From the sequence record MN871440.1: 64,000 nucleotides of DNA. One strand, given 5' to 3'. Shown one piece after another: positions 33,183 to 51,258 of the stretch. The notes under the pieces are model-generated. The model did no database searches. It saw only the letters and a program-made list of their open reading frames with translations, and was not told where the DNA came from. Position numbers and translations under genes: made by a program. Position 1 is the first letter of the stretch. Every line of letters starts with the position of its first letter.

Positions 33183-33197
33183 TTCCAGTCTATTAGA

Positions 33198-33315
33198 ACA
33201 CATTGTCGGGGCGTAGCTCAGACGGATAGAGCAAGTGCCTTCTTATGAACTTTTACGAGAGCACATAAGAAGCACTCGGTCGCTGGTTCGAATCCAGTCG
33301 CCTCGACAATGTGTT
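33198..33315 (+). ncRNA. tRNA-Arg(UCU)-like RNA with a 26-nt anticodon insertion and extended acceptor stem
   Basis: D arm, T arm and acceptor stem intact (33205-33308); AGTGC-CT-TCT-[26 nt]-AA-GCACT; no CCA. Confidence 0.75.
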
Positions 33316-33398
33316 TTACACAACAGAAAAAGTCGCGTCGGAACTGACACTCGTAAAGTCCAATTTTATACAAGAGAGTTCCGGACGCGCATTATTTT

Positions 33399-35965: not shown

Positions 35966-36190
35966 ATGATTAAGTTCTTGTTGATTACTTCGTTGTTCGT
36001 TAACTTTGGTACCAATTATGGCTCACATAGTCATGCAATTGAGAAGTTCGACACCGAAGCAGAGTGCAGAGCCGCGCTGAAAGTCGCGGAAGAAAATGCA
36101 CAAGATACATATGGCGAGAATCGCGTTGGATTCTTCGGTGGTCAAACCAAGTTCGAAGGTCAATGCAAGCCATATTATTACGACAAGTAA
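35966..36190 (+). CDS. small exported protein, probably late
   Basis: Hydrophobic N-terminus; CTAAATA at 35949. Confidence 0.6.
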   Translation: MIKFLLITSLFVNFGTNYGSHSHAIEKFDTEAECRAALKVAEENAQDTYGENRVGFFGGQTKFEGQCKPYYYDK

Positions 36191-36348
36191 AGATTTCGAG
36201 ATTCGAGAAACCGTAAGATCTTTCCGAGCATGTATTGGTGGCATCATGCTCGTATGAACGGGACCAGCGCCCACCTAGCTAGTTGACAGTAGACACTAAA
36301 TAACTTAGTGACAGTGGAACCCCTTGCGCTAACACTGTGATGCGGACT

Positions 36349-36456
36349 GTCTTTTTCTCGGTATGCCGTAAACCTAACGTGGAAGTGAACCCTTATTCGG
36401 TCTTCGGACTCAACCGGCAGTAGCATGAAACAATGTGGGGATATCGAGAAAAAGAT
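36349..36456 (+). ncRNA. structured ncRNA, family B copy 1
   Basis: 16-bp terminal stem; motifs shared with 39086-39216. Confidence 0.6.
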
Positions 36457-36526: not shown

Positions 36527-36555
36527 TTTACAGCGTTGATAAACCGTGATACAAT
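36527..36555 (+). promoter_or_regulatory. sigma70-like promoter
   Basis: TTTACA-17-TACAAT; predicted start coincides with the RNA at 36563. Confidence 0.75.
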
Positions 36556-36562
36556 CTTTATA

Positions 36563-36616
36563 AGGCTCCGTTCAGCAATCAAAACTTTTCTGCGGATGAA
36601 AAACAAAAGTGAGCCT
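36563..36616 (+). ncRNA. family A (helix + TTCAGCAA) RNA, copy 1
   Basis: AGGCTC-CG-TTCAGCAATC...AAAAGT-GAGCCT. Confidence 0.65.
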
Positions 36617-36644
36617 GTTAGAGTAAAGATTTAAGAAGTCTTTA

Positions 36645-36673
36645 TTTACAATCACTAAATAGTAGTGTATAGT
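36645..36673 (+). promoter_or_regulatory. sigma70-like promoter with an overlapping CTAAATA
   Basis: TTTACA-17-TATAGT. Confidence 0.7.
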
Positions 36674-36685
36674 AAACAAAGATAA

Positions 36686-36748
36686 AGAGTGATTTCAGCA
36701 ACCAACTTAAAAAGCCATTATTTTGAAATAGCCTATAAAGTTCACTCT
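36686..36748 (+). ncRNA. family A RNA, copy 2
   Basis: AGAGTGA-T-TTCAGCAACC...TAAAGT-TCACTCT. Confidence 0.65.
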
Positions 36749-36774
36749 GTTTCTTATTTGCAAGTTGTTATTTG

Positions 36775-36855
36775 GGAGACGTGGCTCAAAGGTTGAGCGA
36801 CGGACTGTTAATCCGTGAGGTTAACTCTATGCTGGTTCGAGTCCAGCCGTCTCCG
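36775..36855 (+). tRNA. tRNA-Asn(GTT) with a long variable arm
   Basis: ACGGA-CT-GTT-AA-TCCGT; 14-nt variable region; ends G-CAA. Confidence 0.88.
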
Positions 36856-36878
36856 CAAATAACAATTTACCGTGCTAC

Positions 36879-36985
36879 GGAAGATTTCAGCAAACCATTC
36901 GAATTTTTCTATTAACAAGAAAACAGTGAGGTTCGATTCCTCAACTCTCTAGCACAAGAGTCCAGGTGGCAGTTAAAAGTCTTCT
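36879..36985 (+). ncRNA. family A RNA, copy 3, with an internal T arm
   Basis: GGAAGA-T-TTCAGCAAACC...TGAGG-TTCGATT-CCTCA...AAAAG-TCTTCT. Confidence 0.7.
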
Positions 36986-36992
36986 AGTTTAT

Positions 36993-37067
36993 AGCCATGT
37001 AGCTCAGTGGTAGAGCACACCCCTGATAAGGGTGGGGTCGGCAGTTCAATCCTGCCCATGGCTACCA
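36993..37067 (+). tRNA. tRNA-Ile(GAT)
   Basis: Cloverleaf with CCA. Confidence 0.95.
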
Positions 37068-37073
37068 GTTTCT

Positions 37074-37150
37074 AGTGACGTAGTTTAGTTGGTTAAAATT
37101 CCGGCCTGTCACGTCGGAGAGCGCGGGTTCGAGCCCCGTCGTCACTGCCA
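37074..37150 (+). tRNA. tRNA-Asp(GTC)
   Basis: Cloverleaf with CCA. Confidence 0.95.
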
Positions 37151-37213
37151 GTTTCTACCTAGTAGGAAAAATGAACTTACCCGACAGTAGTTCAATGTTC
37201 TTTGAAAATGCAT

Positions 37214-37356
37214 GGATTCACTTCTGCAACCAATACAAAACTTCAAATCTACTATTAAAAGATAGCACTCCTTTACTTCGGTAGTTGGATGTGCGGCTGA
37301 GAGGGAACAGCAGGTAAAAGTAACGTGGGTTAGTCACCACTCCCGTATGTGAATCC
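37214..37356 (+). ncRNA. family A RNA, copy 4 (multi-hairpin)
   Basis: GGATTCAC-TTCTGCAACC...GTGAATCC. Confidence 0.55.
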
Positions 37357-37425
37357 GAAGACTTGCGTAGGTACTTGCATAAAGTGCCTATTCTAATGTA
37401 TACTTGCGAGTATCTATTAGAATTT

Positions 37426-37499
37426 GGGGGTTTAGCTCAGTTGGAACGAGCGACTGGTTTGCAACCAGTAGGTCAAGGGTTCGAGCCCCTTAACCTCCA
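37426..37499 (+). tRNA. tRNA-Ala(TGC)
   Basis: Cloverleaf; ends A-CAA. Confidence 0.93.
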
Positions 37500-39012: not shown

Positions 39013-39085
39013 GGGGACGTAGATAACTTCATAATCGCAGGTCACTGGGATCTGAGATACGAGTGGAAATCCCGCCGTCTCCACC
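39013..39085 (+). ncRNA. degenerate tRNA-like RNA with CCA
   Basis: GGGGACG/CGTCTCC-A-CCA acceptor stem; non-canonical D and T arms; 5-nt central loop. Confidence 0.5.
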
Positions 39086-39216
39086 AAATTTAAGTGCATT
39101 GCCCTAACCTAAATGGGACGAGATAAGCCCTCGTATGTAGCTAAGAGCCGCAAGCTTGTGCGAACAAAGGCTAGTAGGTGGGAACCACCTGCGGGGATCG
39201 CGACAGTGCATTTAAA
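39086..39216 (+). ncRNA. structured ncRNA, family B copy 2
   Basis: 16-bp terminal stem AAATTTAAGTGCATTG/CAGTGCATTTAAATTT; internal hairpins. Confidence 0.65.
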
Positions 39217-41784: not shown

Positions 41785-42550
41785 GGCCCCGTAGCTAGAG
41801 GGTTCAAGCAGGCGGCTCACATCGTCTCTTAGATGTATAAATAGATTCATAATCTAGGAGACATTAAATGAACTGCGTATATTGCGACAAAACATGTAAG
41901 AACACAAATTCACTGAGACAGCATGAAATCAGGTGCTCGAAAAATCCAAATAAAATACAGTTTCATTGTCCGAGTAGAAAAGGACAGAAAGGCGGAAATA
42001 AGTACACAAAAGCCGCGAAACTTGGATTGGATAAGCCGATTATCTCAGAAGAAACCAGAAAACGATTATCGGAATCCTCTAAGATGCAAAACCAATTTAG
42101 ATGGACACCCGAAGCTAGACAAAAGTTTTCTGATGTTATGAAAGCGGTTGTTAGAAACAATCCGGATTCTTACAGTAAAAATAACGTATCTGGTCGCGTT
42201 AAGATGTATACGTTTGAAGGACAAACTTTCAAAGGAAAGTGGGAATTATTGGTTGCAAAGTGCCTTAGTTCTGTTAAGATTGAATACACAAACGATGTTT
42301 CTCCATTTGAGTATGAGTGGGAAGGAAACAAACACTTATATTTTCCTGACTTTTATCTACCTTCTCTCGATCTTTATATCGAAGTAAAAGGTTACGAGAG
42401 GGAAAGAGACAGATGTAAGTGGAAATCGGTTGACAATCTCGTTGTCCTTAAAAGTTCACATATTAAAGAACTGGAAAGTGGTAAATCCATAATCGAGTTC
42501 TTGTGAAGAATAACCGCTCGTTGTGGGTTCGATTCCCACCGGGGCAACCA
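41785..42550 (+). tRNA. tRNA-Ile2(CAT) split in the anticodon by a 691-bp insertion (exons 41785-41819 and 42511-42550)
   Basis: Joined halves give GGCCCCG...GGCGG-CT-CAT-AA-CCGCT...CGGGGCA-A-CCA, an ileX-like cloverleaf. Confidence 0.85.
41868..42506 (+). mobile_element. putative homing endonuclease, PD-(D/E)xK type, with an N-terminal Zn finger and NUMOD3-like motifs
   Basis: CxxC...H...C; ISEETRKRLS; YFPDFYLP...YIEVKG; lies inside the tRNA gene. Confidence 0.8.
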
Positions 42551-42571
42551 AATTCATTTGAGGAAATAATT

Positions 42572-45883: not shown

Positions 45884-46210
45884 ATGATCCGTGTTCTGTT
45901 TCTTGTGTTCGTCGCGCTGTTATCTGGGTGCGGCGAACCAGAAAAGCCAATCGTGGTTCGAGAAGTGACGGCACAAGCAGCGCGATATAAGCCACAAGAG
46001 TGGAGAGGCAAGTTCTATCAAGAAGCTCGCGTTGAGTTTGATTACAACGGCATTCAAGTGTATACTATAGAAACCGGTAGCTGTACGATTGTGCCTGAGT
46101 TCAAACAAGAAACCGTTGTGTTGCTGAAAGCCGTTTATTCGAATGGAATCAAATACTACATCAAGGACGACAAATACCAAGCTAACTTTTTAGCGAAATA
46201 TTGTTACTGA
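45884..46210 (+). CDS. putative lipoprotein
   Basis: Lipobox LSGC. Confidence 0.65.
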   Translation: MIRVLFLVFVALLSGCGEPEKPIVVREVTAQAARYKPQEWRGKFYQEARVEFDYNGIQVYTIETGSCTIVPEFKQETVVLLKAVYSNGIKYYIKDDKYQANFLAKYCY

Positions 46211-46260
46211 TGTTTACTTGCCACGGAAGGCGAGCTATAGTAACAGAAAACGAGGAACTA

Positions 46261-46839
46261 ATGGCAAAGCTGTTTTTTACACATGCCGCGATGAATGTTG
46301 GTAAGAGTACACAACTGTTACAAGTTGCATACAACTACAACGAGCGCGGTCAAAACGTACTGTTGTTTAAACCTGCTTTTGATACCAGAACTGAGGGAAC
46401 AATCGGTTCTCGAATCGGGATCAATCGCGAATGTCGTTGTGTGCATCACAACGAAAATATGTTTACTTTGATTGAGAAAGAGAGTAAACTACAGAAAATT
46501 GATTGTGTACTTATTGACGAAGCACAGTTTCTAACTGAAACTCAGATCTGGCAACTGTCTGATGTAGTCGATAAGCTCGATGTCCCTGTTATGTGTTACG
46601 GACTAAGAACTGACTTTCTTGGTAATTTGTTTGAGGGTTCAAGAACTCTTTTAGCAATCGCTGATGAAATCAGACAGTTATCCGGGATCTGTGACTGTGG
46701 AAGAAAGTCATGTATGGTAGCTCGCATTGACGACGATGGTCGAGTTATTAAACGTGGTGAACAAATTTGCATTGGGGCTGAACAACGATATATTTCGTTC
46801 TGCCGCAAGTGTTGGAAAGAAAAACTGTCTCACGAATGA
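46261..46839 (+). CDS. tk: thymidine kinase
   Basis: AAMNVGKST; LIDEAQFL; CYGLRTDF; C-terminal Zn-binding Cys pairs. Confidence 0.97.
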   Translation: MAKLFFTHAAMNVGKSTQLLQVAYNYNERGQNVLLFKPAFDTRTEGTIGSRIGINRECRCVHHNENMFTLIEKESKLQKIDCVLIDEAQFLTETQIWQLSDVVDKLDVPVMCYGLRTDFLGNLFEGSRTLLAIADEIRQLSGICDCGRKSCMVARIDDDGRVIKRGEQICIGAEQRYISFCRKCWKEKLSHE

Positions 46840-46874: not shown

Positions 46875-48317
46875 TTGTCTAAGTTTATGAATGCAATGAC
46901 TCAAGCGCAAGCACTGGCACGTACCGCTAACGGTGCAGTTACTAACTATACCACTGGTGATAAGTGTCTGAATCTGTTTTCTCAAATCGGTTCCGCTCGC
47001 GGTAAAGATCTGAGTTCCATGTTTGTGGAAGCTTACACCGAATCTCCGGATTGGGCAGTTCGTATTCTGCAATGGGCTCGCGATATTCGCGGTGGTGCTG
47101 GTGAGCGTGAACAGTTCATTCGTCTGCTGAAACTGCTGGCACATCGTCATCAAGTTGACGCTACCGTCGTTCTGATGAACACACCGGAAATCGGTCGTTA
47201 TAAGGACGTTGTTTCAATGATTGGTACTCCAATCGAAGATGCTGCGGTCGCTATCATGGTGGACGCGATTCTGATCAAACAGAACGGTCTTGCTGCTAAG
47301 TGGGCTCCTCGCAAAGGCAAAGAAGCTGGTATTCTGGCCAAAGCTATGCGTATGACTGCTAAAGAGTATCGTCAGACAATCGTCCGTATGTCGAACACCG
47401 TTGAACAAAAAATGTGTGCTCGTCAGTGGGATGGAATTGATTTCGGTAAACTGCCGTCTGTTGCATCTGCCCGATATCAGAAAGCATTCCTGAAAAATGC
47501 GAATGAGCGTTATGTTGCTTATCTTGAGTCTCTGAAAAAGGGCGAAGCTAAGATCAACGCTGGTGCTGTGTACCCGTATGACATGATCAAATCATTGCGT
47601 ACCGGTTCTTCTGTTGCTGCTGATGCACAATGGAAAGCACAACGCGACTGGATGGCTGGCTCTACTGAAAACGTAATCGCAATGGTTGACGTTTCTGGCT
47701 CTATGAGCACCCCGACTGCCGTCGCTGGTCTGTCTGCTATGGATATCGCGATCTCTTTGGGTCTGTATATCGGTGAACGCTCTGGTGGTGTGTTCAAGAA
47801 CGAAGTGATTACCTTCGATGATAATCCTCAGTTCTACAACATCAAAGCGAAAGGCGATGATCTGCAAAGCATGGTGAATCATCTGGGACGCGCTCCGTGG
47901 GGTGGTTCTACCAACTTCGCTGGTGCATTCAAGATCATTCTTGATCGTGCCGTGAAACATCGAGTTCCGCAGTCTGATATGCCGTCTATGATGGTTGTAT
48001 TGTCTGACATGGAATTCAACGTTGCAGACGGCGGTTATAGCGGATACTATCGTATGCGTGACCGCGAACGTACCAACTTTGAGGTGATTCGTCAGACTTA
48101 CCGCGATGCTGGTTACGAAATGCCGAAACTTGTGTTCTGGAATCTTTGCCCGCGCCCGACTAACAATCCGGTGACCAAAGACGATCAAGGCACTGCGTTG
48201 GTATCTGGTTTTAGTCCTGCAATCATGGAGACAATCCTGAGTGCAAAAGAGTTTAACCCGATGCAAATCATGCTTGACAAGATCATGAGCGACCGATACG
48301 TCGGTATTGATTTCTAA
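46875..48317 (+). CDS. DUF2828-family Ro60/TROVE-like protein with a C-terminal vWA domain
   Basis: RTANGA, WARDIRGGAGERE, LAAKWAPR, KINAGAVYPYD; MIDAS DVSGSM...GSTNF...LSDMEF. Confidence 0.85.
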   Translation: MSKFMNAMTQAQALARTANGAVTNYTTGDKCLNLFSQIGSARGKDLSSMFVEAYTESPDWAVRILQWARDIRGGAGEREQFIRLLKLLAHRHQVDATVVLMNTPEIGRYKDVVSMIGTPIEDAAVAIMVDAILIKQNGLAAKWAPRKGKEAGILAKAMRMTAKEYRQTIVRMSNTVEQKMCARQWDGIDFGKLPSVASARYQKAFLKNANERYVAYLESLKKGEAKINAGAVYPYDMIKSLRTGSSVAADAQWKAQRDWMAGSTENVIAMVDVSGSMSTPTAVAGLSAMDIAISLGLYIGERSGGVFKNEVITFDDNPQFYNIKAKGDDLQSMVNHLGRAPWGGSTNFAGAFKIILDRAVKHRVPQSDMPSMMVVLSDMEFNVADGGYSGYYRMRDRERTNFEVIRQTYRDAGYEMPKLVFWNLCPRPTNNPVTKDDQGTALVSGFSPAIMETILSAKEFNPMQIMLDKIMSDRYVGIDF

Positions 48318-50534: not shown

Positions 50535-50665
50535 TTTGTTGTCGCGATTAGTTCAGTGGGAGAACACCTTTGATCGCAAAGAAGTATCGAGTACGGTTCG
50601 AATCCGTTATAGTGTGGGCACATCGAGAAACGTCGTTGGTTCGAATCCAACATCGCGACAACAAA
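50535..50665 (+). ncRNA. tRNA-like RNA with two T arms
   Basis: 14-bp terminal stem; D arm; GGTTCGAATCC occurs twice. Confidence 0.7.
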
Positions 50666-50666
50666 C

Positions 50667-50799
50667 AACATTATGCTGGCGGTTCGTCTAGTGGTAGGAC
50701 ACTGTAAAATTCATTCTGACAAGAATGTTTTCCGCAATAAATAATCGCCTGTTAAGCCTGTAACGCTCGGTTCGAATCCGGCACCGCCAGCATAGTGTT
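50667..50799 (+). ncRNA. tRNA-like RNA carrying the permuted family A motif
   Basis: 17-bp terminal stem, Glu-like D arm, T arm; insert CATTCT-GACA-AGAATG-TTTTCCGCAA. Confidence 0.7.
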
Positions 50800-50809
50800 G
50801 TGAAAATTT

Positions 50810-50929
50810 GGGGAAGTAGCTCAGTGGTAGAGCAGTAGACGCAAAAAGCGGAATCTGAGAAGATTCTTTACAGCAAGCCAACGCAAATTAAACTATTGGT
50901 CGCGGGTTCGAGTCCCGTCTTCCCCGCCA
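50810..50929 (+). ncRNA. tRNA-like RNA with CCA and a 54-nt anticodon insert carrying the permuted family A motif
   Basis: Canonical acceptor, D and T arms; insert GAATCT-GAGA-AGATTC-TTTACAGCAA. Confidence 0.78.
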
Positions 50930-50979
50930 AAATCTGTCATTCGTGATAGTGTATTAAAAACCACCTGTAGGAAACAAAG

Positions 50980-51258
50980 ATGGAATTTCTGACTGAGAAA
51001 AAACTCCGCAATCTGACCACCGAACGTCTGAATGCACTGCGTAAAACCGTGTTGAAGTCTCGCGCTGCTGCACAATATCATGCAGACAATCAAGACTGTT
51101 CTGATGCGGATATGGAACGCGCTCACAATCTGGCCGAGTATTACGATCTGATCAAGTCTATCATGGACGAACGTGAACACATCGAAAAACCGGTAAAAGA
51201 CAAATCTCGCCCTCGTCGTGATGGACGTAACGTAAAACGTTCTTGGGATAGTGAGTGA
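50980..51258 (+). CDS. hypothetical protein
   Basis: ORF followed by a terminator. Confidence 0.65.
   Translation: MEFLTEKKLRNLTTERLNALRKTVLKSRAAAQYHADNQDCSDADMERAHNLAEYYDLIKSIMDEREHIEKPVKDKSRPRRDGRNVKRSWDSE

What the first reader, a model, noticed from the sequence alone, without database searches (positions are those of the whole stretch)
36879..36985. Family A copy 3 contains a circularly permuted tRNA-like module (YrlA-like topology)
Inside the motif helix the order is: a hairpin with a 7-nt loop (TTTTCT-ATTAACA-AGAAAA), CAG, a perfect T arm (TGAGG-TTCGATT-CCTCA, 36927-36943), a hairpin ACTCT-CTAGCACA-AGAGT where an acceptor stem would be but closed by a loop, then CCAGGTGGCAG with a D-loop-like GG. 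Established: YrlA RNAs are permuted tRNA mimics with a loop-closed acceptor stem. Inference: this is an analogous uncharged tRNA mimic, attached through a different arm.
Basis: partly seen in the sequence, partly recalled or inferred. Interest (0 to 1): 0.75.

Follow-up and report, generated by a model that had tools for sequence, protein, structure and literature searches.

The report
Phage Y RNA with permuted tRNA-like domain
The spacer between two tRNA genes of this T4-like Aeromonas phage encodes a conserved small RNA shaped like a circularly permuted tRNA, and it most likely partners a Ro60-like protein encoded 10 kb away, so it is a phage version of the bacterial YrlA/Y RNAs rather than a new kind of element.

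Summary
The window is Aeromonas phage AsFcp_1, a T4-like phage of the Aeh1/PX29 group.

The element (36879-36985) is a four-way junction:
- an outer stem;
- a variable-arm-like (V) hairpin;
- a canonical T arm;
- a loop-closed, acceptor-like hairpin joined directly to the T arm.

It is conserved in seven diverged Aeromonas phages, with compensatory changes in all four helices.

A covariance model built only from non-Aeromonas phage RNAs matches it full length (40 bits, E 4e-6). Those RNAs have the same outer stem, an ACAGCAA motif and a complete T arm, closed acceptor and D arm. Rfam YrlA hits them below its threshold.

These RNAs sit next to 455-510 aa DUF2828/DUF7788 proteins, annotated "Ro-like RNA binding protein" in mycobacteriophages. 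The window encodes one at 46875-48317, and its predicted fold matches Ro60 best.

The YrlA-like reading is therefore supported. One detail is not: the arm order is exactly YrlA's, so it is not attached through a different arm.

It departs from canonical YrlA in three ways. It has no D stem (only GG...GG remains), it carries ACAGCAA instead of GNCGAA, and Rfam YrlA does not hit it. I rate it a new variant of a known kind.

Binding to the Ro-like protein and the function are inferred, not shown.

The parts
36879..36887 (+). Outer (basal) stem, 5' strand GGAAGAUUU
   Evidence: Pairs with 36977-36985. Pair types vary among relatives: G-C, C-G and U-A at one position, A-U and U-A at another, G-C and A-U at a third.
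36887..36893 (+). UCAGCAA, the local form of the family hallmark ACAGCAA, directly 3' of the stem
   Evidence: CAGCAA is invariant in 8 Aeromonas phage homologues. ACAGCAA is present in 25 of 27 distinct family members that my search pattern did not select. It is also present in the mycobacteriophage and Listeria phage RNAs.
36905..36923 (+). V (variable-arm position) hairpin: 6 bp, loop AUUAACA
   Evidence: The hairpin is kept in all relatives, with a C-G/U-A to U-A/C-G swap in avDM12. Loop sequence and length vary.
36927..36943 (+). T arm: 5 bp plus loop UUCGAUU
   Evidence: GGTTCGA-TCC is invariant. Stem positions 2 and 3 covary: G-C/A-U/G-U and A-U/G-C.
36944..36961 (+). Acceptor-like (AS) hairpin: 5 bp closed by an 8-nt loop, no spacer after the T arm
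   Evidence: Relatives show ACUCU/AGAGU, GCUCG/CGAGU, GCUCU/AGAGU and CCAG/CUGG. It aligns to the AS helix of model R1.
36962..36976 (+). 3' junction CC-AGGUGGCAG-UUAA: D-loop remnant with two GG dinucleotides and no D stem, then an A-rich tract
   Evidence: GG..GG followed by Y-R-G is kept in all relatives. Model R1 aligns this region with the 17 D-arm positions deleted.
36977..36985 (+). Outer stem, 3' strand AAGUCUUCU
36563..36616 (+). Family A copy 1: short Y-like RNA (stem AGGCUC/GAGCCU, UCAGCAA, hairpin with loop UGCGGAU, A-rich tract)
   Evidence: It is conserved in L001-L006. A promoter-like site at 36527-36555 places the transcript start at its 5' end. The same UGCGGAU occurs in the short RNA next to the Ro-like gene of a mycobacteriophage.
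36684..36750 (+). Family A copy 2: short Y-like RNA (stem AGAGUGA/UCACUCU, UUUCAGCAA ... AAAGU)
   Evidence: It is conserved, with the stem changed to GGAAUGA/UCAUUCC in relatives. A promoter-like site lies at 36645-36673. R1 scores it 20.5 bits.
46875..48317 (+). Gene for a 480-aa Ro60-fold protein (DUF2828 + DUF7788/vWA), the proposed partner
   Evidence: tblastn E 1e-70 to 1e-140 against proteins beside family RNAs. AlphaFold2 model: pLDDT 85, pTM 0.84. The nine best PDB fold matches are all Ro60, E 5.5e-8 to 4.7e-6; eight have TM 0.59-0.63 and the ninth, human Ro60 9nen, has 0.45.
50676..50792 (+). U2: unpermuted tRNA-like RNA. It has an open acceptor stem, a D arm and a T arm. The anticodon arm is replaced by AAAAU-CAUUCU-GACA-AGAAUG-UUUUCCGCAA.
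   Evidence: Conserved in Aeh1, avDM12 and phiAS5 with T-arm covariation.
50810..50929 (+). U3: unpermuted tRNA-like RNA. Acceptor GGGGAAG/CUUCCCC plus an encoded G-CCA. The anticodon arm is replaced by AAAAAG-C-GGAAUCU-GAG-AAGAUUC-UUUACAGCAA.
   Evidence: Rfam scores it as a tRNA at 54 bits with a 46-nt insert. Fold. The closed stem covaries in phiAS5 and NCCA is kept in all four phages. Aeh1 annotates it as a 122-nt tRNA-Val.

Best explanation
36879-36985 encodes a Y RNA of the YrlA type: a non-coding RNA whose ends pair into a stem and whose interior is a circularly permuted tRNA mimic.

What the evidence shows:
- The fold is conserved and covaries.
- The element belongs to a large phage RNA family marked by a terminal stem, ACAGCAA and an A-rich 3' junction.
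- That family co-occurs with Ro60-fold DUF2828 proteins in unrelated phage groups.
- This phage has such a gene.

How it most likely works (inferred):
1. It is transcribed with the tRNA operon from the early-type promoters at about 36.46-36.67 kb.
2. It is released when tRNA-Asn and tRNA-Ile are matured, and the outer stem protects its ends.
3. The stem with its ACAGCAA/A-rich junction binds the phage Ro60-like ring protein.
4. The T arm stacks on the closed acceptor hairpin, and the junction GG caps the T loop. This gives a tRNA-like elbow without a D stem, as in the tRNA-like domain of tmRNA.
5. The elbow docks a tRNA-recognising factor and so tethers or gates the Ro-like protein. This is by analogy with the Rsr-Y RNA-PNPase complex.
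6. The likely purpose is surveillance, turnover or repair of tRNA and other structured RNA during infection.
For: Structure and conservation:
- Searches show conservation and compensatory changes in the Aeromonas group.

Homology to complete YrlA-like RNAs:
- Model R1 was built from 16 non-Aeromonas RNAs, and 17 of its 21 pairs show compensatory changes.
- R1 hits the element and its seven orthologues full length at 33.7-43.4 bits.
- On 98 family hits, 92.7% of pair cells are paired against 37-55% when the partners are slid. The covariation score is 0.646 against 0.185, with 0 of 500 shuffles reaching it.
- Rfam YrlA hits the complete relatives at 33.6-37.7 bits.

Protein partner:
- DUF2828/DUF7788 proteins lie beside the RNAs in 6 of the 10 large flanking ORFs I scanned in IMG/VR loci that carry a family RNA.
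- 705 phage records hold a homologue, annotated 'Ro-like RNA binding protein' in mycobacteriophages.
- The window has a copy with a Ro60 fold.

The same RNA-protein pairing elsewhere:
- Mycobacteriophage MkaliMitinis3 has three tandem RNAs right after the gene.
- Listeria phage LMTA-148 has three tandem RNAs right before the gene.
- E. coli phage wV8 has an R1 hit of 73.7 bits in the tRNA cluster after the gene.

Expression in a relative's family:
- A P100-like Listeria phage has three very highly transcribed unannotated regions within 2 kb upstream of its Rsr-like gene. The authors proposed Y RNAs (PMC12282133).

Precedents:
- YrlA has V, T, AS and D arms, and D. radiodurans Yrn1 lacks a full D arm (PMC4201824).
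- Phage phiLo Ro60 binds phage Y-like RNAs and host PNPase (PMC12135203).
Against: - There is no expression, end-mapping or binding data for this phage.
- Rfam YrlA gives no hit on the element even at E<=10.
- The D stem is absent, so the elbow is inferred only from a conserved GG..GG.
- The GNCGAAN0-1G motif proposed for Rsr binding is absent.
- The Ro-like gene is 10 kb away, not adjacent.
- The protein reaches the TROVE entries of the PDB only at E 0.32 by sequence. The link to Ro60 rests on the predicted fold and on depositors' annotation.
- The single-sequence fold is not unusually stable.
- My IMG/VR pattern required CAGCAA and AAAGT, so those two motifs are ascertained in the 29 pattern-found members.
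Confidence: 0.78

Rival explanations
1. It is a decaying tRNA pseudogene or tRNA fragment left in the spacer. It has no function of its own, and the T arm is a relic.
For: The T arm is tRNA-identical and the element lies in a tRNA cluster. The D stem is lost. Other orphan tRNA-like pieces occur in the window at 39063-39093 and about 42520-42552.
Against: The whole architecture is kept in phages whose flanks are only about 73% identical. All four helices show compensatory changes, including helices that no tRNA has in that order. The outer stem and CAGCAA are shared with non-tRNA-like copies 1 and 2. It matches a model of complete permuted RNAs from unrelated phages.
Confidence: 0.04
2. It is a cis-acting processing or stability element of the tRNA operon. 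For example, it could be a structured spacer that guides RNase E, RNase III or RNase P cleavage or sets the tRNA-Asn/tRNA-Ile stoichiometry, with no link to the Ro-like protein.
For: It sits exactly between two tRNAs and has no promoter of its own. Stems flanking tRNAs are common processing signals (background knowledge).
Against: Copies 1 and 2 carry the same stem and motif, yet each has its own promoter-like site and no flanking tRNA on the 5' side. In the mycobacteriophage and the Listeria phage, the same stem-plus-ACAGCAA RNAs lie directly beside the Ro-like gene and are not flanked by tRNA genes. A processing spacer would have no evident need for a canonical T loop or a closed acceptor hairpin.
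Confidence: 0.08
3. It is a free-standing tRNA decoy. The elbow mimic would soak up a host tRNA-targeting defence nuclease or a tRNA-modifying enzyme, independently of the Ro-like protein.
For: tRNA-rich phages are thought to counter tRNA-cleaving defences (background knowledge). The mimic has no anticodon and no free CCA end, so it cannot decode.
Against: Anticodon nucleases recognise the anticodon loop, which is missing here. The conserved stem and ACAGCAA module, shared with short copies that have no tRNA-like part, points to a common protein partner. The module co-occurs with the Ro-like gene across phage groups.
Confidence: 0.07

Closest known systems
YrlA (Y RNA-like A; Rfam RF02553) of Salmonella, Mycobacterium and other bacteria, partner of Rsr/Ro60
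   Same: The ends pair into a stem. The interior runs V arm, T arm, loop-closed acceptor stem-loop and D region, which is a circularly permuted tRNA. There is no CCA end and no anticodon loop. A Ro60-fold protein is encoded in the same genome, and several Y RNAs occur per genome (YrlA plus the short YrlB, as here copy 3 plus copies 1 and 2).
   Different: There is no D stem. The motif after the stem is ACAGCAA rather than GNCGAAN0-1G. Rfam YrlA does not hit it. The partner is of the DUF2828/DUF7788 class rather than Pfam TROVE. The element is embedded between tRNA genes, 10 kb from the protein gene.
Y-like RNAs beside 'Ro-like RNA binding protein' genes of mycobacteriophages (phage YrlA candidates of Chen et al. 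2014)
   Same: They share the same stem plus ACAGCAA hallmark and the same protein family (about 32% identity to the window protein). Both have three tandem RNAs, including a short one with a UGCGGAU loop. R1 scores the mycobacteriophage RNA at 81 bits, though it was one of the model's seed sequences.
   Different: The mycobacteriophage YrlA-like RNA has a full D arm and lies directly after the protein gene, outside any tRNA cluster.
Deinococcus radiodurans Yrn1
   Same: It is a Y RNA with a T arm but no full D arm, only D-loop-like features (PMC4201824).
   Different: It has a different arm order, an anticodon-like arm, and a canonical Rsr partner. Its PNPase tethering is shown experimentally.
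tRNA-like domain of tmRNA
   Same: It has a T arm stacked on an acceptor helix, and the T loop is capped by a GG from a D-loop analogue without a D stem (background knowledge). Two-piece tmRNAs are circularly permuted.
   Different: tmRNA has a free, alanine-charged CCA end, an mRNA-like part and SmpB as partner. Rfam tmRNA matches only the T loop here (7 bits).
T4 stable RNAs species 1 and 2 (rnaC, rnaD) of the T4 tRNA cluster
   Same: They are small stable RNAs of unknown function co-encoded with phage tRNAs. rnaC carries a T arm.
   Different: They show no match to model R1 beyond the T loop (11.7 bits) and lack the stem plus ACAGCAA module.
Class I RNAs of dictyostelid amoebae (Rfam RF01414)
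   Same: [quoted passage not shown] The interior is variable and CUG follows the stem. RF01414 is the best Rfam match of window copy 1 (17.1 bits). It also gives an 18.9-bit match to the 5' part of the mycobacteriophage YrlA-like RNA, second only to YrlA's 21.4-bit match to that RNA's tRNA-like core.
   Different: The scores are far below threshold (41.5 bits; E about 1). They are eukaryotic, reported as unique to Dictyostelia and bound by the RRM protein Rnp1A (PMC7919456). No link to DUF2828 proteins has been tested.

Membership tests
YrlA (Chen et al. 2014; Rfam RF02553) | Scores at or above the Rfam gathering threshold (69 bits) | tested here: not met
   No YrlA match at E<=10 on 36600-37450. 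Complete relatives reach only 33.6-37.7 bits.
YrlA (Chen et al. 2014; Rfam RF02553) | 5' and 3' ends pair into a stem that carries the protein-binding site | tested here: met
   A 9-bp outer stem with covariation.
YrlA (Chen et al. 2014; Rfam RF02553) | GNCGAAN0-1G motif near the 5' end | tested here: not met
   The conserved motif is (A/U)CAGCAA. A TTCGAA at 36898-36903 is present in AsFcp_1, AsFcp_4 and Ah1 but absent from the other five homologues.
YrlA (Chen et al. 2014; Rfam RF02553) | Canonical T arm (G53-C61 closing pair, UUCRANY loop) | tested here: met
   TGAGG-TTCGATT-CCTCA; the loop and closing pairs are invariant.
YrlA (Chen et al. 2014; Rfam RF02553) | Loop-closed acceptor-like stem-loop directly after the T arm | tested here: met
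   36944-36961, no spacer, 5 bp, covarying.
YrlA (Chen et al. 2014; Rfam RF02553) | D arm (4-bp stem, loop with GG) after the acceptor-like stem-loop | tested here: not met
   Only CC-AGGUGGCAG is present, with no stem. R1 aligns it with the D arm deleted. The GG dinucleotides are conserved.
YrlA (Chen et al. 2014; Rfam RF02553) | V region or arm before the T arm | tested here: met
   A 6-bp hairpin at 36905-36923, 3 nt before the T arm, is kept in all relatives.
YrlA (Chen et al. 2014; Rfam RF02553) | Encoded near a Ro60/Rsr (TROVE) gene | tested here: inconclusive
   A Ro60-fold protein is encoded 10 kb downstream. Pfam assigns DUF2828/DUF7788, not TROVE. In relatives the RNAs are adjacent to the gene.
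YrlA (Chen et al. 2014; Rfam RF02553) | tRNA-type tertiary contacts and modifications (pseudouridine 55, dihydrouridine); bound by Ro60 in vivo | not testable with these tools
   This needs probing, modification mapping and immunoprecipitation.
   40.2 bits, E 4e-6 in 96 kb; orthologues score 33.7-43.4 bits.
   UCAGCAA, UUAAAAG, and UAG after the stem (CAG in the relatives).
   Window 46875-48317.
Functional (decoding) permuted tRNA gene, as in Cyanidioschyzon merolae | 7-bp acceptor stem, D arm, anticodon arm and processing to a CCA end | tested here: not met
   The acceptor-like stem is 5 bp, there is no D stem, there is no conserved 7-nt anticodon loop, and no tRNA is called.

The most novel reading that the evidence does not exclude
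The terminal stem plus ACAGCAA module may be the recognition element of DUF2828-class Ro60-fold proteins wherever these occur. Three consequences would follow:
- Phages carry a very large, unannotated Y RNA family distinct from the GNCGAA-type Y RNAs.
- One genome shows the same tRNA scaffold built around that module in both circular permutations. Copy 3 has an open stem and a closed acceptor. U2 and U3 have a closed stem and an open acceptor, and U3 has an encoded CCA end, so it might even be charged.
- The dictyostelid Class I RNAs have the same architecture and the same ACAGCAA, and no mechanism is given for them in the paper read here. They would be the eukaryotic members of this family, working with eukaryotic DUF2828 proteins.
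Probability: 0.2. Interest if true: 0.85.

Novelty: new variant of a known kind. Interest (0 to 1): 0.55.

Why it matters
Y RNAs with a tRNA-like domain are known from bacteria and a few phages. Their effector and purpose are still open questions.

This case places such an RNA inside the tRNA operon of a T4-like phage, a tractable lytic system. Its Ro60-like partner is in the same genome. The tRNA-like domain is trimmed to a T arm, a closed acceptor hairpin and a GG. This shows which parts selection keeps and points to the elbow as the working surface.

The family appears widespread. The partner protein has 705 homologous phage records and thousands of metagenomic homologues. It is linked to tRNA clusters and, in Listeria phages, to RtcB ligase genes.

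It therefore offers a direct route to test whether phage Ro-Y complexes police, repair or protect tRNAs during infection. It also explains several odd 'tRNA-OTHER' and over-long tRNA annotations in these phage genomes.

Tried and rejected
- ARAGORN and Rfam at gathering threshold found nothing in the spacer.
- Rfam at E<=10 gave only a 7-bit tmRNA T-loop match.
- The single-sequence fold of the AsFcp_1 copy prefers an alternative pairing and is not significant. I therefore used comparative data.
- MAFFT misaligned the 3' half of the acceptor-like hairpin by two columns. I tabulated the helices per sequence with a script instead.
- T4 rnaC/rnaD as homologues: rejected.
- A decoding permuted tRNA: rejected (see membership test).
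- Conserved pairing between the two junction strands, as an anticodon-stem analogue: I compared them by eye across the seven phages and found no consistent pairing, so this is unresolved.
- PDB sequence searches with the protein and with its profile gave only E 0.32 to TROVE entries. The fold search was needed.
- A literature search for DUF2828 returned only plant and tardigrade papers.
- The supplementary phage list of Chen et al. 2014 and the 2020 Ro60 review are not held.
- A regex scan of the whole window for further open-stem copies found none beyond copies 1-3.
- R1 hits at junctions of ordinary tandem tRNAs (about 15-25 bits) are the known tRNA-dimer artefact and were ignored.
Full report
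**Source and setting**

The window is 100% identical to Aeromonas phage AsFcp_1 (MN871440), a T4-like phage of the Aeh1/PX29 group in Straboviridae. It holds a cluster of more than 20 tRNA genes. The finding fills the 136-nt spacer between tRNA-Asn (36775-36856) and tRNA-Ile (36993-37067). No GenBank record of any related phage annotates anything there.

**The observation**

- a 9-bp outer stem, 36879-36887 with 36977-36985;
- CAGCAA at 36888-36893;
- a 6-bp hairpin with a 7-nt loop at 36905-36923;
- CAG;
- a perfect T arm at 36927-36943 with loop UUCGAUU;
- directly after it, a 5-bp hairpin closed by an 8-nt loop at 36944-36961;
- then CC-AGGUGGCAG.

ARAGORN and Rfam call no tRNA here. On its own the sequence does not fold unusually well (z -1.07). 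Significance therefore has to come from comparison.

**Conservation in Aeromonas phages**

The same spacer in Aeh1, Ah1, AsFcp_4, avDM12, phiWae14, phiAS5 and Ahp1_CNU carries the same element. The flanks of the more distant of these phages are only about 73% identical.
- Five of the eight sequences fold by themselves into the same four helices.
- The outer stem shows G-C, C-G and U-A at one position, A-U and U-A at another, and G-C and A-U at a third.
- The T stem shows G-C/A-U/G-U and A-U/G-C.
- The acceptor-like hairpin is ACUCU/AGAGU, GCUCG/CGAGU, GCUCU/AGAGU or CCAG/CUGG.
- The first hairpin swaps C-G/U-A for U-A/C-G.
- Invariant features are CAGCAA, the T loop with its closing G-C pairs, and two GG dinucleotides in the 3' junction.
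- The loop of the first hairpin varies in sequence and in length (6-8 nt), so it is not an anticodon loop.

**Family A in the window**

Three tandem elements share a terminal stem, (U)UCAGCAA after the 5' strand and AAAAGU before the 3' strand:
- copy 1 at 36563-36616;
- copy 2 at 36684-36750;
- copy 3, the finding.

Copies 1 and 2 are short and have no tRNA-like part. Each is preceded by a sigma-70-like promoter match that would start transcription at the foot of its stem (36527-36555 and 36645-36673). The number of promoter matches is not above chance; what is informative is their position. Both copies are conserved in the relatives, and copy 2 has a compensated stem.

**Relatives elsewhere**

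A pattern scan of IMG/VR (CAGCAA, a T arm, AAAGT) returned 108 loci. About 32 of them hold RNAs with the following architecture:
- a 7-9 bp terminal stem and ACAGCAA;
- an optional V hairpin and a T arm;
- a loop-closed acceptor hairpin;
- two nucleotides, then a textbook D arm (GCUC-AAUGGUA-GAGC);
- an A-rich tract and the 3' strand.

Most of these RNAs lie inside phage tRNA clusters. This is the arm order of YrlA as defined by Chen et al. 2014 and in the crystal-structure preprint.

Rfam YrlA hits these RNAs, one of them full length, but below its threshold (33.6-37.7 bits). E-values are 1.6e-5 to 2.4e-4 in the 9-kb search. The full-length hit has E 3.2e-7 in the 181-nt search.

I aligned 15 of them plus one mycobacteriophage RNA. 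RNAalifold recovers the stem, T arm, acceptor hairpin and D arm, with compensatory changes in 17 of 21 pairs. The resulting model R1 contains no Aeromonas sequence. It hits the finding full length at 40.2 bits, E 4e-6, and its seven orthologues at 33.7-43.4 bits. In each case the 17 D-arm positions are deleted.

On 98 hits (56 distinct) in the IMG/VR loci, 92.7% of pair cells are standard pairs, against 37-55% for slid partners. No shuffle of 500 reaches the observed covariation.

My pattern forced CAGCAA and AAAGT on the members it found. However, 25 of the 27 distinct members found only by the model also carry ACAGCAA right after the stem. So do the RNAs found through the protein, described below.

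**The protein partner**

Six of the ten large ORFs I scanned in the flanks of loci that carry these RNAs carry Pfam DUF2828 plus DUF7788. By tblastn the family is in 705 phage records. It is annotated 'Ro-like RNA binding protein' in mycobacteriophages and 'RNA-binding protein' or 'vWFA protein' elsewhere.

The window encodes one at 46875-48317:
- tblastn E is 1e-70 to 1e-140.
- Pfam scores are DUF7788 1.5e-50, DUF2828 6e-29 and VWA_2 1.4e-5.
- Sequence search against the PDB barely reaches TROVE entries (E 0.32).
- An AlphaFold2 model (pLDDT 85, pTM 0.84) has Ro60 structures as its nine best PDB matches, at E 5.5e-8 to 4.7e-6. Eight have TM 0.59-0.63 and the ninth, human Ro60 9nen, has 0.45. 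After these come only isolated vWA domains.

The pairing of RNA and protein recurs in unrelated phages:
- In mycobacteriophage MkaliMitinis3, three tandem stem-plus-ACAGCAA RNAs follow the gene. The first is short with a UGCGGAU loop like window copy 1, the second is YrlA-like with a full D arm, and the third is short.
- In Listeria phage LMTA-148, three such RNAs (58, 58 and 107 nt) precede the gene, and RtcB ligase genes lie downstream.
- In E. coli phage wV8, a Felix O1 relative, the gene is followed by the tRNA cluster, which holds an R1 hit of 73.7 bits.

For a P100-like Listeria phage, a multi-omics study reported the following. There are three extremely abundant transcripts from unannotated regions within 2 kb upstream of the Rsr-like gene. 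The protein is present in virions. The authors proposed that the transcripts are Y RNAs (PMC12282133).

**Interpretation**

The finding is a Y RNA of the YrlA type. It belongs to a phage family whose hallmark is a terminal stem plus ACAGCAA and whose partner is a Ro60-fold DUF2828 protein.

Shown here:
- the conserved, covarying four-way junction;
- homology to complete permuted tRNA-like RNAs;
- co-occurrence with the protein family;
- the Ro60 fold of the window's protein.

Inferred:
- co-transcription with the tRNAs and release by tRNA processing;
- binding of the stem/ACAGCAA module to the protein;
- stacking of the T arm on the closed acceptor hairpin, with the junction GG capping the T loop as in the D-stem-less tRNA-like domain of tmRNA;
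- recruitment of a tRNA-elbow-binding factor, by analogy with Rsr-Y RNA-PNPase and with phage phiLo Ro60, its Y-like RNAs and host PNPase.

A 5-bp acceptor-like stem is a poor RNase P substrate, since M. smegmatis YrlA needs 7 bp. The loop therefore probably stays closed.

The YrlA-like topology is right. 'Attached through a different arm' is not. The hairpin with the 7-nt loop is in the V position, and the module joins the stem where YrlA's does.

**Differences from YrlA**

The element has no D stem, carries ACAGCAA instead of GNCGAAN0-1G, gets no Rfam hit, has a DUF2828-class partner, and lies inside a tRNA operon 10 kb from the protein gene. D. radiodurans Yrn1 is a precedent for a Y RNA without a full D arm.

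Because two defining features fail, I do not file it as a member of Rfam YrlA. I file it as a variant of the same kind.

**Unpermuted siblings**

R1 also hit 50610-50989. Read directly, this region holds three tandem tRNA-like units with open acceptor stems:
- U1: 50541-50659
- U2: 50676-50792
- U3: 50810-50929

In U2 and U3 the anticodon arm is replaced by the same module closed by a loop. U3 has AAAAAG-C-GGAAUCU-GAG-AAGAUUC-UUUACAGCAA, and U2 has UUUUCCGCAA.

U3 has a 7-bp acceptor stem followed by an encoded G-CCA. The array is conserved in Aeh1, avDM12 and phiAS5, with compensatory changes in the T arms and in the closed stem. It lies 2.2 kb downstream of the Ro-like gene.

So the genome holds the same scaffold in both circular permutations. 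Public annotations call these units tRNA-Val (122 nt), tRNA-Leu, tRNA-Ala or tRNA-OTHER.

**Caveat on R1**

Junctions of ordinary tandem tRNAs give weak false hits of about 15-25 bits, as Chen et al. warned. The hit on the finding is not of that type, because no tRNA overlaps it.

**A lead, not a result**

Among all Rfam families, the best match of window copy 1 is the Dictyostelium Class I RNA model (17.1 bits). For the mycobacteriophage YrlA-like RNA, the same model gives an 18.9-bit match to the 5' stem-plus-motif part. That is second only to YrlA's 21.4-bit match to the tRNA-like core. The E-values are about 1, so neither match is significant.

The Class I consensus reads stem-CCUUACAGCAAU...A-rich-stem-CUG. 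Class I RNAs are about 60 nt long. They have a terminal stem, an unpaired 11-nt motif next to the 5' strand and a variable interior. They are reported as unique to Dictyostelia. DUF2828 proteins are mentioned for plants and a tardigrade. Whether dictyostelids have one could not be tested here.

Noticed in passing
window 36563-36616 and 36684-36750: These are two short Y-like RNAs (Family A copies 1 and 2). They share the stem, UCAGCAA and A-rich junction with the finding but have no tRNA-like part. Each lies behind its own promoter-like site. The UGCGGAU loop of copy 1 also occurs in the short RNA next to the Ro-like gene of a mycobacteriophage (L117:4471-4512).
   Followed up: partly
window 46875-48317: This is a 480-aa DUF2828/DUF7788 protein just downstream of thymidine kinase (46201-46839). 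Its predicted fold matches Ro60. The family has more than 6,000 metagenomic homologues and 705 phage records, most of them labelled hypothetical.
   Followed up: yes
window 50541-50929: This region holds three tandem unpermuted tRNA-like RNAs (U1-U3). In U2 and U3 the anticodon arm is replaced by the loop-closed stem plus (A/C)CNGCAA module, and U3 ends in an encoded G-CCA. ARAGORN's tRNA-Ala(cgc) at 50542-50616 looks like an artefact of U1. U1 contains two T-arm-like hairpins, and I did not resolve its interior.
   Followed up: partly
window 33190-33322: This is a tRNA-like RNA (Rfam tRNA 52 bits, 100 nt; ARAGORN is silent). Flanking sequence extends its acceptor stem to a 20-bp helix. Its anticodon stem continues into an 8-bp helix and a small hairpin instead of an anticodon loop. 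MFE is -58.4 kcal/mol, z -7.6.
   Followed up: no
window 36564-36617; L117:4536-4582: For window copy 1, the Dictyostelium Class I RNA model (RF01414) is the top Rfam match (17.1 bits). For the mycobacteriophage RNA it gives an 18.9-bit match to the 5' part, second to YrlA's 21.4 bits on the tRNA-like core. Neither is significant (E about 1). Both share a terminal stem, ACAGCAA(U) next to the 5' strand, an A-rich 3' junction and CUG after the stem.
   Followed up: partly
L122 (Listeria phage LMTA-148) 3162-3427 and 6352-7562: Three tandem stem-plus-ACAGCAA RNAs lie directly upstream of the Ro-like gene, and two RtcB ('tRNA splicing ligase') genes lie downstream. In the related phage CKA15, the Ro-like protein was detected in purified virions (PMC12282133).
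   Followed up: partly
window 36775-36856: tRNA-Asn(GUU) is 82 nt long, with an 11-nt insertion in the variable region. The orthologues in six related phages are also 82-85 nt; Ah1's is 75 nt. Several other tRNAs of the cluster are also over-long, for example Thr at 85 nt.
   Followed up: no
window about 42520-42552 and 39063-39093: These are orphan tRNA 3'-half-like pieces, each a T arm plus an acceptor 3' strand and CCA, with no tRNA called around them.
   Followed up: no
window 36190-36450: This is a non-coding stretch, richer in G+C, between the last ORF and the promoters of the RNA/tRNA cluster. It contains an 18-nt inverted repeat (36350-36367 with 36438-36455) and looks structured.
   Followed up: no
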